This document shows, in pieces, positions 33,948 to 57,301 of a DNA stretch of 64,000 nt. The translations under genes and the position numbers were made by a program. This stretch comes from Diadema antillarum (lineage: Eukaryota), in assembly GCF_040938485.1 (NCBI RefSeq), contig NW_027271626.1, positions 310,001 to 374,000 on the forward strand, in the 5' to 3' direction. The notes beneath the pieces are model-generated. The model had not been told where the DNA came from and made no database searches. It saw only the letters and a program-made list of their open reading frames with translations. Each line of letters starts with the position of its first letter. The stretch's first letter is position 1.

Positions 33948-34074
33948 CATTCAGACTCTCTTCAATGAGGTTCAGGTACCATTCCCTCTCCTTCATCCAG
34001 TCCGTGGTCCCCAGCGAGGTGTCGAGGTCTTCGTCGCAATCGACAAAGAGGCTGTCCTCCTCCCCATCTTCCAT
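33948..34074 (-). CDS. BCR: Candidate alternative first coding exon of the BCR/ABR gene (MEDGEEDSLFVDCDEDLDTSLGTTDWMKEREWYLNLIEESLN + G)
   Basis: ATG at 34074 with an in-frame TAA upstream at 34099-34101. GC-rich, coding-like composition. Donor AAT G|gtaggt is phase 1, matching the phase-1 acceptor at 28105. CpG-richer upstream region at 34100-34900. Confidence 0.7.
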
Positions 34075-35575
34075 CCTTCCCCTGCACACACCCAAATCTT
34101 AGATCGCAACCATTGCCTTTGCTCTCCCCCGAGCACAGATTTCTTTCCCACGAGGTATGAAAGATCTGGCCGTGTTGGAAGTCTTATTCCTTCCTGATCT
34201 CATGCGAGAGCTAACGAGCCCGAGTCTCCGGCTCTGAGACTCTCTCCTCCACACTATGACGGATGGATCCTCATATCCACGAAAATAGACTGACGAAGCA
34301 TAGTCTCCGCGACGCCATTTACCAAAGTGTTTCTGTAGTGACAGACGTTTTTAAAACAGTCTGGGAGGCTTGTTGTGAGAGCATTCATCGATCAAACAAC
34401 AACAACAGCCACAGCCTCTTGTCGACCAGGTTTCACTCATTCCATCAAAGCACAAAACATCGTTGCACCTTCAGTGTGTGATGAGTAGCCACACATACAG
34501 CAGAACATAGGGACACGGACTACTGACTGGCCAGATTTATTAGGCTGTTACAAGAGCCCGTGATGAAGTATCTGCCGACACAACAATGAGAGAAGTAGCC
34601 AACGACGCATTCACAGAGAAAAGCGTCAGCCTGATGACCCCGCCTACGTAAACGTGGATGCAATTCAGACACAGTGGTATGATGCAGTACGGTCACGCAA
34701 GTTTTACAACATGATGCATTATCTGGGAATAACATGCAGTAATCAGCCTTCGTAAATATCGCCCAGCGGCCTCATATTACCAAGGCAGATCAAATGACAG
34801 AGGACGACTGCCGCTCCATGACAGTCCAACACATTTTTTTTTCTCACAGGCGCAGTGTAGATCAGTCTCCCGCCGCTCAGCAACCAAGGCTAGGCAAACT
34901 TCCTCGTTGGAAGAAAAACCAAGATAACCAATATTTTGGATCTAGGTAAACAAAGCAAAGTCAATGTTCAGCCAAAGACAGTCTTCATACTTTACACTGC
35001 ATCCTCTTCTCAATGAAGATAATGATTAGAATTTAAAAAATAATAACATTCAGTTGATATGTGTTATCTCCACGTGACATCCAATTTAGACACAGCCAAC
35101 AACTGTCATAATCTATGCGGAGAGCTCATAACGTAACCCAAATGAACACAAAGGTGAACATGCTCTACTGTATGAGAAAGTAAGGACCGACATTAACGTG
35201 GCAGTACTGGTATGCAATGTAAGAGTGGAAGGCTTTTGCAACAGGTACTGCATCAGAAATCACCATGCCTTCAGAATAAAAAACCACAACAAAACTCCTG
35301 TCAGTAAAGACTACGGATGAGGACAGCTGCATGGACAGGGTAGGGAACACAGTTAATAACTTGCGGTGCTAGATAATATTTGTAATTCTACTGGTATCGT
35401 TTGCTACTCAAATTCTGTTTCATTACCTTTGTCACAAATACTTGAGGGCATACATCAACCCAATGTATCAGTTTTCTGCTCTGAATGATAAAGTGTCAAA
35501 GATCTCGTTTTGGTCAATTTCTGACCCATAGCATTACTTGTACGTTTTTAGATGATACAAGTTATCATTTAAATT

Positions 35576-35716
35576 NNNNNNNNNNNNNNNNNNNNNNNNN
35601 NNNNNNNNNNNNNNNNNNNNNNNNNNNNNNNNNNNNNNNNNNNNNNNNNNNNNNNNNNNNNNNNNNNNNNNNNNNNNNNNNNNNNNNNNNNNNNNNNNNN
35701 NNNNNNNNNNNNNNNN
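35576..35716. other. Assembly gap (141 N) next to a (GATA)n microsatellite
   Basis: N run followed by a tagata/gata repeat to ~35760. Confidence 0.99.
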
Positions 35717-35729
35717 CTTGTAGATAGAT

Positions 35730-35760
<31 letters not shown>

Positions 35761-53256: not shown

Positions 53257-55673
53257 TTGTGGATTATCATCACTGGTCACAAATGACCAGACAAAATGTA
53301 TGATGGCACAGATTTATGTTACCACTGGGTCTCACGAAAAGGGAGGGGGGATTGCAGGAGGGGATGAAGAGAGGCAGATGAGGAGAGAAAAGCCTCCGGC
53401 TTCATATTTAGTATGCACATTTTGTAAATGGAGCAAATCAACATCCATTCACGATATTTAACAACATCTCCCCTGGTTCCCTCCACTGTGGGACAGCACA
53501 CACTCCCCCATGATGCATCTCTTTCCCTCTCCATCTCTCCCTCCCCCTCTCTCTCCTTCCCTCATCTCTCTGATCATCAGAGATCTGAGGGAGTAAGGAA
53601 GCCAGCCAGCCAGGTCTGGAGTAAGCAAATACAGCCATCAAACAGTGGTGGCTTATGAAATATGAGATACCCTCATCACTCAACACAAAGGACTCCGCGT
53701 GCCCAACTCCAAGCTGAGACAATCTTGTGCCCCGGTGCCCTGCGACAACTGTTCCCCCGATTGTTAGCCCTGCATTTTGGCAGTTAGTAAATTTTCAAAT
53801 AGATACAACATACAAGTCTGTACAAAGAAGACTGCATGCTTTTGCTTTCTAACATTTGTGTGTTGTATGGATGATGTCTGACTAGCAAAATATGTTGTTG
53901 TTTTTTTGGCCTCCATGTCACACACATTTTACATAACATCACTCAAAGTAATCTTTTGATTTTTGTGCATTTGTTGTCCCATTTTTTTCCAATTCCCTCT
54001 TCCCCCCCCCCCCCCCCAAAAAAAAAAAAAAATAGGGGGGGGGAGAGGGAGGGGGAACCTGGTAACTGTTTGAGAAATAAGATCTGGCCATTAAAGATGT
54101 TTGCTTCATCCCAAAAATAATTTTGCAAATTGACAAACTGCAGGAGTGCAAGTTTCTGCAGCAGTCAAGCAATTTGTGCAGCAAGCCCCTCTTCTGACAG
54201 TGAAGGCAAGAAATATCTCTAGCATTTGCTTTGCTTACCCAGGGGAAGACTTACAGAGTACACGTGCACCATTTTGTAGACTGATAGGGACTCATATTGG
54301 CCACAAAACATCACCAAACAATCAAGGGTGGCACTGCCTGCTCTAGATGGTAACAACAGGGGGAAAAAATAATTTATAAACAAAAACCCCTGGCGATATT
54401 CAGTTTGTAAACACACTACTATATGACCAGCCAACAAAGTACCATCATGTTTTTCAGAATTCTTCCAGAGTCTCGAGTCAGTATCAACCTCACGTCACGC
54501 TATACTGTACCTCCATGTGCAATGGTGTACTGGGTTTGACCGTGTTTATGTCAGCAAGGACACCTTTGACTGTTACCTTATGCTATCAAAACGGTCGCTG
54601 AGATCTGATCTGTAGTACGTGTGGCTGCGGTGATCACGTCACAAAGAAAATCTCTTTTGACATCTGGATAATATCCTGCAGTTTGATCATCGTGTTTGGG
54701 CATTGTGTATTAAAATGTTCATTGCAGAGTTCACTGATAGAAAAAGACCTTGAAACCAGTGGAAGAGGAAATGGTATGGAGCCAGGATTTGTGCCATCAA
54801 AAGCACAGAAAAACAAATGTTCTATAAAGGAAAAGCTCACTAATGATATGATGCCAGCAAAATGGTCAATACAGAAATAATCCAACTGTATTAAGACATG
54901 ATAATTGCTGTTGATCACACAGTATTATATATACGTAGAAATCCTTATTGCACACTGCAGTTGGAGGTTGTGGCATACAATCAATCATGACAAAAAAAAA
55001 AGACATAATGTCATCTACATACAAGTGTAGGTCCTACTGTGCATACATGTAGAATACTGCAATGCATTATTACTTCTTTCCTATATTACTGGGGAGCAGA
55101 AATGTTTCACTAGAAAAATAACCAGACACTTTTGTGATTCTAAAAGGCAAAGCATTGTCCACATAACCAACCATAGAGATATTTTACATTTGTTTTTTGC
55201 TTTTTATGCCTCTACAGTAGAGGAAGTATTCAATGGTTAAAAGGTTGTTTGCTGTACAAAAGCTGGAGAAGCTTTACACAGGGCCTGGATTTGGCAAGTT
55301 TGGAATGGTTTCGTCTCCGCTCTGAACTTTCGCTTTGAACAGATATCAGATTCACATCCTCAGTTGATAGGGATTGTAAATCATCAGCTACTCATTACTT
55401 TACATTTATCCCTATGGTGATCATTGCCTCTTTTTTTTATTCTACTATACTGCTACTCAGTTCCCATCATTGAACTGAGAGAGAGAGAGAGAGAAAGTAA
55501 TATATATGTACTCCATATACTCCATCTTCACATCTTATTTCTTGTCCCCCCCCCCCCCCCCGCAGGAAAAATGAAAATGAAATTTAAGTTTATGTGAACA
55601 AAAATTAATTTATTGACATCTATCTCTCAACAAAGAATGTGTGTATACATAAGATATTTAAACACACACACAT

Positions 55674-55715
<42 letters not shown>

Positions 55716-56439
55716 TCACGTATGTGGGTTTTTTTTTTTCTTTACCAACATCTCTTTATTTCCAGCATAATCCCAAAAGGTCATGGTGGGATAAATGAGA
55801 TTTTGGTGGTGATCAAGATTAATAGTCTATAGGTCTTCAACCAGGATATTCCTCTCAATATGCATGGGATATGGAGAGGGAGTGTTTCAAAGCACAGCTC
55901 AGGAAGAATGAGCTAATGAGATGAATTTTGTTCAGTTTGATGAAAGACTGATTGGATTTGACTCTTTAGACACAGTGATTCCTGGGATTGAAGTCCTTTT
56001 TATGTTTCATGCCAAGAATGTGGCATCTTTTGTGAAATAATACTCAGTTGGTGTCATTTTGTTTTGCTTTGATTTGTTCTGTTTTGTCTCGGACCCTAGG
56101 GGTGGTCGCTGTTGCAGGCAAGAAAGGATACCATGGTATTTCAAAAGAAGTTTTTACTTGCACTTTTATTTTGCCCTCCTCTTTTATTTTTTATTTTTTG
56201 GGTGTGAACACTGTATTATGCACTGCACGTGTTAACGTGACTGCGCACCTCACTGCACTCAGTACGACTATACTCTACTAAGAGGGATGTACTTTAATGG
56301 AAGAAGAAGAAGAAGAAGTATTATATGAACATCATCACTTTTAAATTGGTTTAGAGGTGCACTGCATGGAATGACTGTAACAAATGGCACTAACATACAC
56401 GGTAACCCAGTATTTACTGGGTATCAAGCTGGAACATAC

Positions 56440-57301
56440 CTGCATCATGCCTGGTCTCTGTGGTGCTGTTTACAACATCATCTGTCGTACTTGAGCTCTC
56501 ATAGCCTTGTTCACTCAACTTGTCGCAGTCCCCTATGGAGGGCGAGACCGGTTTGAAATTACTCCTGCAGCTCAGTATTGCCAGCTTTTTCTCCGTTGTT
56601 ATGTGCAGGTCGTCTAGGCTGCTGCCAAACGACCCAGCCCGCACGAGCACGTCGTCATCTCCTTCGTTGGCGTAATCTGTGTCAGATCCATGGCTCCCGG
56701 TCTCATTACCAAGAGAACTTGGGCTTATGGAATTGTGCTGATAGGAACCCAGTATGAAGGCCACATTTTCGTAATCGTCTCCGCTGTCGTCGCTGTCATC
56801 GTCTCCGTGATTTATTGGGATCGGGGTCCTGATCGATCTACTAGGCGCAGGCCTCGGGGGAACAGCCGGAATTGCATCCAAGCCTGCGTTGACGTGTTCG
56901 TGCTCCTCGTCGCACTCATTGTCCGAATCCCCCTCCAATATTTCCTCTTCGCTTTCTTCCCCTCTCGACTTCAGTCCATCCTCACTGTCAAGGTCGATGC
57001 TGTGGGCATCGTCAGAACCAAGAGATTCTAGCCCCTCGTTGGCCCGTCGGATCCTAATGATTTCTTTCTGGATCCATGTCTGGCAGAATTTCTCTCGTCT
57101 AATCTCGCTCCTCAATTTAAAGATGCGACTTCGCGTGAGTTTGAGGTCATCCTCTAGCAGCTGGAGGTCGGTGAGCGCACGCTTGCTGGCGAACGGGAGA
57201 GCCGCGGCGACAGTCGTGTCCAGCAGAAATATGAGACCCGGCGGTGGAAACTCCCCGAAGTTTCTTCTCCATGCTTCCATAAAATCCTCCTTGATCGTCA
57301 T
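56440..57301 (-). CDS. BCR: BCR/ABR-family gene, long first coding exon (287 codons + 1 nt): Bcr oligomerisation coiled coil plus acidic low-complexity region
   Basis: ATG at 57301 in context AAAATGA; the ORF-track start at 57367 is GTG. MTIKEDFMEAWRRNFGEFPPP...LLEDDLKLTRSRIFKLRSEIRREKFCQTWIQ resembles the human BCR N-terminus (FAEAWKAQFPDSEPP...IEQELERCKASIRRLEQEVNQERFRMIYLQ, recalled). Ends GAT GCA G|gtatg, a phase-1 donor. Confidence 0.9.

What the first reader, a model, noticed from the sequence alone, without database searches (positions are those of the whole stretch)
33948..57301. One gene may encode both a BCR-like and an ABR-like protein through alternative first exons
Seen: two separate ATG-initiated exons, 57301-56440 (coiled coil, Tyr motifs) and 34074-33948 (42 acidic residues, upstream in-frame stop), both end in phase 1 and can splice to the same exon at 28105. 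Established: vertebrates have paralogues BCR (with the oligomerisation exon 1) and ABR (without it, with short alternative N-termini). Inference: the pre-duplication gene made both forms by promoter choice, so the vertebrate pair may reflect subfunctionalisation of ancestral isoforms.
Basis: partly seen in the sequence, partly recalled or inferred. Interest (0 to 1): 0.72.

Follow-up and report, generated by a model that had tools for sequence, protein, structure and literature searches.

The report
Conserved second start exon, urchin BCR/ABR
The single BCR/ABR-type gene of the sea urchin Diadema antillarum has a real, urchin-conserved second start exon that would give a short protein without the self-association domain, but other urchin annotations already show this form and the proposed link to the vertebrate BCR/ABR split is not supported.

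Summary
On the minus strand, 57301-56440 and 34074-33948 both start with ATG. Both end one base into a codon before a GT, and both fit the acceptor at 28105.

The short exon is a real coding exon. Its codon usage beats every other open stretch in the 28-kb intron. Its last 20 residues and its splice donor are conserved in Strongylocentrotus purpuratus and Lytechinus. In those species NCBI models (S. purpuratus isoform X4, L. variegatus isoform X2) use the same exon as the protein's N-terminus. It lies in the same intron and joins the same next exon.

The window is Diadema antillarum. Its RefSeq models carry only the long form. The genome has one BCR/ABR gene per haplotype, and both haplotypes are assembled. 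No RNA data could be laid, so use of the exon in Diadema is inferred.

The evolutionary reading is not supported:
- The exon was found only in sea urchins.
- It shows no similarity to the short first exons of vertebrate ABR.
- Predicted long ABR isoforms of vertebrates carry a strong Bcr-Abl oligomerisation domain, so ABR keeps both forms.

Verdict: an unannotated isoform of a kind already annotated in related urchins. Interest is modest.

The parts
56440..57301 (-). Exon 1 coding part (287 codons plus 1 base): the BCR-type N-terminus with the coiled coil and a YENV motif
   Evidence: It equals residues 1-287 of RefSeq XP_071504887.1. Pfam Bcr-Abl_Oligo scores 18.9 bits, below the 23.1 cut-off. 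A profile-profile comparison of echinoderm exon 1 with the vertebrate BCR/ABR N-terminus gives probability 91%, E = 9e-7.
33948..34074 (-). Alternative first coding exon (42 codons plus 1 base), followed by the donor GTAGGT at 33947-33942
   Evidence: Codon-usage score is 36 bits in frame and -6 and -1 in the other frames; none of 3208 open 42-codon windows in intron 1 reaches it. It is the top untrained segment of the whole minus strand. BLASTP to S. purpuratus X4 residues 45-64 gives 13/20 identical, E = 1e-8. In that block 8 codons differ only synonymously and 7 non-synonymously, and the donor is identical. The exon is intact in the other haplotype with one E-to-D change.
34099..34113 (-). 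Upstream in-frame stop TAA (34101-34099), which closes a 4-codon upstream ORF starting at ATG 34113
   Evidence: Read directly. It rules out a longer open frame running into the exon from upstream.
34075..35000 (-). Single-copy, GC-rich stretch upstream of the short exon; candidate internal promoter and 5' UTR (inferred)
   Evidence: GC is 0.48, the highest 1-kb value in the window outside exon 1 and its promoter. CpG observed/expected is 0.77 against 0.2-0.5 in most of the gene body. Only the two haplotype copies exist in the genome. This is weak evidence: no such CpG signal lies directly upstream of the orthologous exon in S. purpuratus or L. variegatus.
27930..28105 (-). Common exon 2 (starts in phase 1, ends in phase 0)
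   Evidence: It equals residues 289-346 of the RefSeq protein.
23539..23658 (-). Exon 3, the start of the DH domain (40 codons, phase 0 to phase 0)
   Evidence: It equals RefSeq residues 347-386.
1219..1404 (-). Exon 4, DH domain (62 codons)
   Evidence: Pfam RhoGEF scores 23.3 bits, below the 27.6 cut-off. The best solved structure is the human BCR DH domain 5N6R, E = 9e-12; the next RhoGEF is at 0.003.
35576..35716 (.). Assembly gap in intron 1, inside a (TCTA)n repeat
   Evidence: The flanks are collinear on the other haplotype. The letters were not read.
27650..27778 (.). Second assembly gap, in intron 2, 152 nt downstream of the exon 2 donor
   Evidence: The flanks are collinear on the other haplotype (109 nt apart there). 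The letters were not read.

Best explanation
The window holds the 5' part of the single BCR/ABR-family gene of Diadema antillarum. The gene has a DH domain, a PH domain, a C2 domain and a RhoGAP domain, spans about 134 kb and lies on the minus strand.

The gene has two alternative first coding exons. Exon 1 (57301-56440) gives the annotated 1122-aa protein with a BCR-type N-terminal coiled coil. A second start lies in intron 1. It most likely has its own promoter in the GC-rich kilobase above 34074. It gives a transcript whose first coding exon (34074-33948, 42 codons) splices in the same phase onto exon 2 at 28105.

The product would be about 877 aa. It lacks the coiled coil and the YENV site and keeps the DH-to-RhoGAP part. 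In domain layout it resembles the classical short ABR forms.

Shown here: the exon's anatomy, its coding signal, and its conservation. Also shown: its place in the same intron in two other urchin genera, and its use as the N-terminus in their NCBI models. Inferred: its transcription, start site and splicing in Diadema itself, and any function of the conserved tryptophan-rich motif W.KE.EWYL..IEE.LN.
For: Anatomy. The coding score is far above all of intron 1 and specific to one frame.

Orthologous isoforms start with the same exon and continue into exon 2. They are S. purpuratus XP_030847642.1 and the older XP_011673011.1, L. variegatus XP_041456549.1, and L. pictus.

The layout is the same in both other genera:
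- S. purpuratus: exon 1 at 2001-2852, short exon at 19462-19656, exon 2 at 23715-23888 of L018.
- L. variegatus: exon 1 at 1001-1876, short exon at 21131-22000, exon 2 from 24952 of L019.

The protein is conserved although synonymous sites have changed (8 synonymous-only against 7 non-synonymous codon differences in the 20-codon block). The donor CTGAATG|GTAGGT is identical, and the flanks do not align. The ORF is intact in both haplotypes.

Gene identity rests. Single-gene status rests.
Against: There is no RNA evidence for Diadema. The only run found behaves as DNA: one contig lies unspliced across the donor. RefSeq gives Diadema only the long form. The urchin isoforms are computed NCBI models, and I could not inspect their transcript support. 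The exon layout alone is what chance would give. Haplotype divergence does not single the exon out. The GC/CpG island is not seen directly upstream of the orthologous exon in the other two urchins. An AG at 34083-34082 leaves room for an upstream non-coding exon, so the start site may lie further upstream.
Confidence: 0.85

Rival explanations
1. The two-start layout, a long oligomerising form and a short form, is ancestral to deuterostome BCR/ABR genes. The vertebrate BCR/ABR pair divided these forms between the two copies.
For: Short forms made from internal first exons are annotated in sea urchins, in the hemichordate Ptychodera flava (an 11-aa first exon in intron 2) and in vertebrate ABR. 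Echinoderm exon 1 is homologous to the vertebrate oligomerisation region.
Against: Vertebrate ABR keeps a long first exon with a strong Bcr-Abl_Oligo match (67-98 bits) beside its short ones, so the forms were not divided cleanly. The urchin short exon was found only in sea urchins. It shows no similarity to ABR's short exons. The hemichordate exon is a different exon in a different intron. Independent origin of internal promoters in a very long intron explains the data equally well.
Confidence: 0.12
2. The short exon is not the first exon. A non-coding exon further upstream splices to the AG at 34083-34082, and translation still starts at ATG 34074.
For: An AG directly precedes 34081, 7 nt upstream of the ATG and downstream of the in-frame stop. 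The start site is unknown.
Against: The polypyrimidine tract before that AG is poor (GATTTGGGTGTGTGCAG). The 1 kb upstream is single-copy, GC-rich and less CpG-depleted, as a promoter would be. The protein and the main conclusion would be unchanged.
Confidence: 0.12
3. The exon is an internal insert placed between exon 1 and exon 2.
For: It lies in intron 1 and has a candidate acceptor at 34083-34082.
Against: Entering at 34081 from the phase-1 end of exon 1 puts the exon out of frame, with a TGA after about 30 codons (my reading). In every annotated urchin isoform the exon is at the N-terminus, never internal.
Confidence: 0.03
4. It is a chance ORF, or an exon no longer used in Diadema.
For: The layout is expected by chance. 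There is no Diadema RNA evidence and no RefSeq isoform.
Against: The frame-specific coding score is unmatched in the intron. The motif and donor are conserved between the orders Diadematoida and Camarodonta, with synonymous change. The ORF is intact in both haplotypes.
Confidence: 0.05

Closest known systems
S. purpuratus 'active breakpoint cluster region-related protein isoform X4' (XP_030847642.1, 894 aa; older XP_011673011.1)
   Same: It starts with the orthologous acidic exon, which ends in the same W.KE.EWYL..IEE.LN motif, followed by the split Gly codon and exon 2. The exon lies in intron 1, 4 kb upstream of exon 2, and has the identical donor.
   Different: Its exon is 66 aa with a longer run of glutamates, against 42 aa in Diadema. 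It is an annotated model, whereas the Diadema exon is not annotated.
Lytechinus variegatus isoform X2 (XP_041456549.1) and the L. pictus models
   Same: Same motif, same junction to exon 2, same intron.
   Different: The exon has grown to 290 aa of E/Q/D/K-rich repeats, so this 'short' form is as long as the exon 1 form (1125 aa).
Vertebrate ABR (859-aa and 822-aa forms, and predicted long X1 forms)
   Same: One gene has a long first exon with the oligomerisation domain and short alternative first exons. The long exon and the MEPLSH exon join the same next exon, as in the urchin. The DH, PH, C2 and RhoGAP domains are shared.
   Different: The short first exons show no detectable similarity to the urchin exon. 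The published view is that Abr lacks the oligomerisation domain (PMC3044668). The long forms are computed models.
Human BCR
   Same: It is the best solved-structure match of the DH exon (5N6R, E = 9e-12). The N-terminal coiled coil is homologous at profile level. Exon 1 has a YxNV motif.
   Different: Pfam's oligomerisation model is matched only below its cut-off. The echinoderm coiled-coil region carries an insertion.
Ptychodera flava isoform X2 (XP_070572890.1, 799 aa)
   Same: An internal alternative first exon gives a short form that lacks exon 1.
   Different: It is a different 11-aa exon, lies in intron 2 and joins the first DH exon. It shows no similarity to the urchin exon.

Membership tests
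BCR/ABR family (DH-PH-C2-RhoGAP) | DH domain closest to BCR/ABR rather than to other RhoGEFs | tested here: met
   Two exons match RhoGEF profile positions 20-79 and 83-124, each below the cut-off as a single exon. The best PDB hit is human BCR 5N6R at E = 9e-12, against 0.003 for the next RhoGEF.
BCR/ABR family (DH-PH-C2-RhoGAP) | PH and C2 domains between the DH and GAP domains | tested here: met
   PF19057 and PF00168 are precomputed for the near-identical RefSeq protein of the other haplotype, P0002. Single exons alone gave no Pfam hit.
BCR/ABR family (DH-PH-C2-RhoGAP) | C-terminal RhoGAP domain in the same gene | tested here: met
   Exons at C738:235294-235410 and C738:233138-233239 on the same strand score 41.3 and 25.9 bits, above the 24.5 cut-off.
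BCR-type long form | N-terminal oligomerisation coiled coil (Pfam Bcr-Abl_Oligo) | tested here: inconclusive
   Pfam scores 18.9 bits, below the 23.1 cut-off. There is no PDB hit. The profile-profile comparison with vertebrate BCR/ABR N-termini gives 91%, E = 9e-7 over 57 columns. Homology is likely. Oligomerisation was not tested.
Alternative first exon / internal promoter isoform | Own ATG, closed upstream frame, and a donor phase that fits the common exon | tested here: met
Alternative first exon / internal promoter isoform | Orthologous exon used as the N-terminus in related species, at the same place in the gene | tested here: met
Alternative first exon / internal promoter isoform | Transcripts with the junction 33948 to 28105 and a start site upstream of 34074 in this species | not testable with these tools
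   No RNA run was found. The one run laid behaves as DNA.
ABR-type short form | Short N-terminus homologous to an ABR first exon | tested here: not met
   A profile of four urchin exons finds no ABR N-terminus at E <= 10 among the 339 family proteins fetched by that point. hhalign probabilities are 0.3% and 0.2%. The resemblance to ABR is in domain layout only.
Subfunctionalisation of ancestral isoforms after duplication | Each daughter gene keeps a complementary subset of the ancestral forms | tested here: not met
   ABR models of a shark and of mammals carry Bcr-Abl_Oligo at 67-98 bits beside short forms.
Subfunctionalisation of ancestral isoforms after duplication | The short-form exon predates the vertebrate duplication | tested here: inconclusive
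   The exon was found only in sea urchins and not in five other ambulacrarian gene loci. A short motif could have diverged beyond detection.

The most novel reading that the evidence does not exclude
A two-start layout is an ancient feature of deuterostome BCR/ABR genes. It consists of a long first exon with the oligomerisation coiled coil plus one or more internal promoters giving short forms without it. Sea urchins, hemichordates and vertebrate ABR kept it. BCR is then the derived copy that lost, or rarely uses, the short forms. The short first exons evolve too fast for their common origin to be visible.
Probability: 0.2. Interest if true: 0.5.

Novelty: new member of a known kind. Interest (0 to 1): 0.3.

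Why it matters
For Diadema antillarum this adds a missing isoform to the annotation of its only BCR/ABR gene. The new form would lack the self-association domain and the Grb2-type tyrosine site.

More widely, sea urchins offer one gene in which a long, oligomerising form and a short form can be compared. A conserved tryptophan-rich motif marks the short form, and its role is open.

The check also turned up a point that matters for the evolutionary story. Current gene models give vertebrate ABR a BCR-like first exon with a strong oligomerisation-domain match, which differs from the usual textbook description of ABR.

Tried and rejected
RNA test. The look-up of sequencing runs with the short exon gave one run of unknown kind. 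Laid on 28046-34045, it showed only unspliced contigs and intronic repeats, so there is no junction evidence either way.

Haplotype conservation as a sign of constraint. Divergence is too patchy. The short exon region ranks in the middle.

Exon layout as evidence. It is expected by chance.

Searches that found little. The word search with the short exon found nothing; its length filter hides full-length proteins. The word search with exon 1 found only one metagenome contig carrying a relative's exon 1. The PDB search with exon 1 found no BCR hit.

Amphioxus isoforms. The long and short forms share one N-terminus and differ internally, so they do not bear on the question.

An apparent resemblance. 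L. variegatus reads IDKVL and ABR's 822-aa form reads LDKVL. Profile tests do not support this.

CpG island as a general promoter mark. It is not seen directly upstream of the exon in S. purpuratus or L. variegatus.

Three of the four paper searches gave nothing relevant on BCR/ABR isoform evolution.

Exons were searched one by one by reference, and the full-length query was the database's own RefSeq protein.
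Full report
**What is in the sequence**

The gene lies on the minus strand. The long exon runs from ATG 57301 to 56440 (287 codons plus one base) and is followed by GT. The short exon runs from ATG 34074 to 33948 (42 codons plus one base) and is followed by GTAGGT. The short exon's ATG has A at -3 and G at +4. An in-frame TAA at 34101-34099 closes the frame upstream. Both exons fit the acceptor AG at 28107-28106. Each join makes a Gly codon and continues as TLSSDS. 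The short exon has 15 acidic residues out of 42.

**The gaps**

Gap 35576-35716 lies in a (TCTA)n repeat within intron 1. Its flanks map to the same diagonal of a second copy of the locus, 145 nt apart. The two sides are continuous and no reading frame crosses the gap. A second gap, 27650-27778, lies in intron 2. Exon 2 (28105-27930, ends in phase 0) and exon 3 (23658-23539, starts in phase 0) join without needing anything from it. I used only the coordinates of flanking alignments and did not read or fill the letters of either gap.

**Which gene and which organism**

Downstream exons match the DH domain, the C2 region and the RhoGAP domain. The DH exon's best solved relative is human BCR (5N6R, E = 9e-12), far ahead of other RhoGEFs.

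A search of protein representatives with the DH exon returned a 1122-aa RefSeq protein of Diadema antillarum, named 'active breakpoint cluster region-related protein-like'. One copy is annotated on each of two contigs (XP_071504887.1 on the window's contig, XP_071501100.1 on C578). Its residues follow exon 1, the split Gly, exon 2, exon 3 and the DH exon exactly. The junction 56440 to 28105 is therefore the annotated one.

The contig C578 copy is collinear with the window and 91-98% identical, block by block. Nearly all RhoGAP hits in the assembly come in such pairs, so both haplotypes are assembled. The DH exon has no other relative in the genome; the next hit has E = 0.08. There is thus one BCR/ABR gene and no separate ABR orthologue.

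**Is the short exon real?**

The layout alone is not evidence. Random sequence like the intron yields 1.7 such candidates, and one was observed. Haplotype divergence does not help either. Three other lines do.

1. Codon usage. A score trained on the gene's other exons against the intron gives 36 bits in frame and about zero out of frame. None of 3208 open 42-codon windows in intron 1 reaches it. It outranks a true DH exon that was not in the training set.

2. Orthologous isoforms. Cluster listings of the urchin orthologues showed isoforms that start with the same exon:
- S. purpuratus isoform X4, in two annotation releases.
- L. variegatus isoform X2.
- L. pictus models.
All start with an acidic exon that ends in W.(K/R)E.(E/D)WYL..I(E/D)..L(N/S), followed by the split Gly and exon 2. 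BLASTP of the Diadema exon against the S. purpuratus N-terminus gives 13 of 20 identical, E = 1e-8.

3. Position and selection. In both S. purpuratus and L. variegatus the exon lies in intron 1, 3-4 kb upstream of exon 2. In the conserved 20-codon block, 8 codons differ only synonymously and 7 non-synonymously. The donor CTGAATG|GTAGGT is identical and the flanks do not align.

Diadema and Strongylocentrotus belong to different orders of Euechinoidea. From my own knowledge their split is on the order of 200 million years old. This is conservation at the protein level.

**What is not shown**

No RNA data for Diadema could be used. The one run found holds an unspliced contig across the donor and behaves as DNA. 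RefSeq has no short form for Diadema. The start site is unknown.

The kilobase above the exon is single-copy and has the highest GC in the window outside exon 1 and its promoter. Its CpG depletion is milder than in the gene body. The same signal is not seen directly upstream of the exon in the other two urchins, so it is only a hint. An AG at 34083-34082 allows an upstream non-coding exon. Entry from exon 1 at that AG would break the frame.

**How it most likely works**

An internal start gives a product of about 877 aa. It lacks the first 287 residues, which hold the coiled coil and the YENV motif. It keeps the DH-to-RhoGAP part.

The coiled coil of echinoderm exon 1 is homologous to the vertebrate oligomerisation region at profile level (91%, E = 9e-7). 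Pfam's model is matched only below its cut-off.

**The evolutionary reading**

The published view is that Abr lacks the N-terminal oligomerisation domain (PMC3044668). The protein searches show otherwise. Many vertebrate ABR 'isoform X1' models carry Pfam Bcr-Abl_Oligo. I confirmed 67-98 bits for a shark, a pika and a macaque. In the shark and the macaque, the long exon and the short MEPLSH exon join the same next exon. ABR itself therefore keeps both kinds of start, and the forms were not simply divided between BCR and ABR.

The urchin short exon was not found in the gene loci of Patiria, Holothuria, Amphiura, Antedon or Ptychodera. It has no detectable similarity to either short first exon of ABR. 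Ptychodera has a short form too, but from a different 11-aa exon in intron 2.

Internal starts may be ancient, or they may have arisen repeatedly. The data do not decide between these.

**Verdict**

It is missing from the Diadema annotation but already modelled in other urchins. The subfunctionalisation idea is not supported as stated.

The full-length query was the database's own RefSeq protein.

Noticed in passing
not in the window; proteins P0170, P0196, P0370: Predicted long ABR isoforms of a shark, a pika and a macaque start with a strong Bcr-Abl oligomerisation domain (67-98 bits). The precomputed Pfam column shows the same domain for many further vertebrate ABR models. Papers state that Abr lacks this domain (PMC3044668). 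Whether the long forms are expressed is not known to me.
   Followed up: partly
whole assembly; C738 and C578:1633026-1667027: The assembly holds both haplotypes of this locus, 91-98% identical block by block. RhoGAP hits genome-wide mostly come in pairs. RefSeq annotates both copies as separate genes, which could be misread as a recent duplication.
   Followed up: partly
L019:21131-22000 (Lytechinus variegatus): The orthologous short exon has grown to 290 aa of E/Q/D/K-rich repeats while keeping the C-terminal WYL motif. The exon is 42 aa in Diadema and 66 aa in S. purpuratus.
   Followed up: partly
protein P0302 (L. variegatus isoform X4, 839 aa); window 27501-29000: A third urchin N-terminus reads 'MR' and then goes straight into exon 2. 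This implies a further first exon that contributes only the ATG and one more base. In Diadema the DNA around and just upstream of exon 2 is also less CpG-depleted (observed/expected 0.85-0.95).
   Followed up: no
window 12501-22500: CpG is not depleted here (observed/expected 1.0-1.8), unlike the surrounding gene body. This fits a young insertion and overlaps the CACTA element noted by another finding.
   Followed up: no
window 41001-42500: A second stretch in intron 1 is not CpG-depleted (observed/expected about 1.1). Its nature is unknown.
   Followed up: no
window 36087-36458 and 11187-11309, minus strand: Two open stretches encode near-identical peptides (…PGREK.NLKRENGRFCKN.FSAGDLPSKTGELE), so this is a dispersed repeat with coding-like composition.
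   Followed up: no
L009:2479-7595 (C738:242479-247595), outside the window: Long open frames with reverse-transcriptase and integrase-like sequence (my reading of the translation) lie in a downstream intron of the same gene. This is probably an LTR retrotransposon.
   Followed up: no
window 34099-34113, minus strand: A four-codon upstream ORF (ATG GTT GCG ATC TAA) ends 24 nt before the short exon's ATG and is identical in both haplotypes.
   Followed up: no
window 56771-56782, minus strand (exon 1): Exon 1 carries a YENV motif in an acidic context, as noted by another finding. Human BCR has a Grb2-binding tyrosine in a YxNV context (my own knowledge).
   Followed up: no
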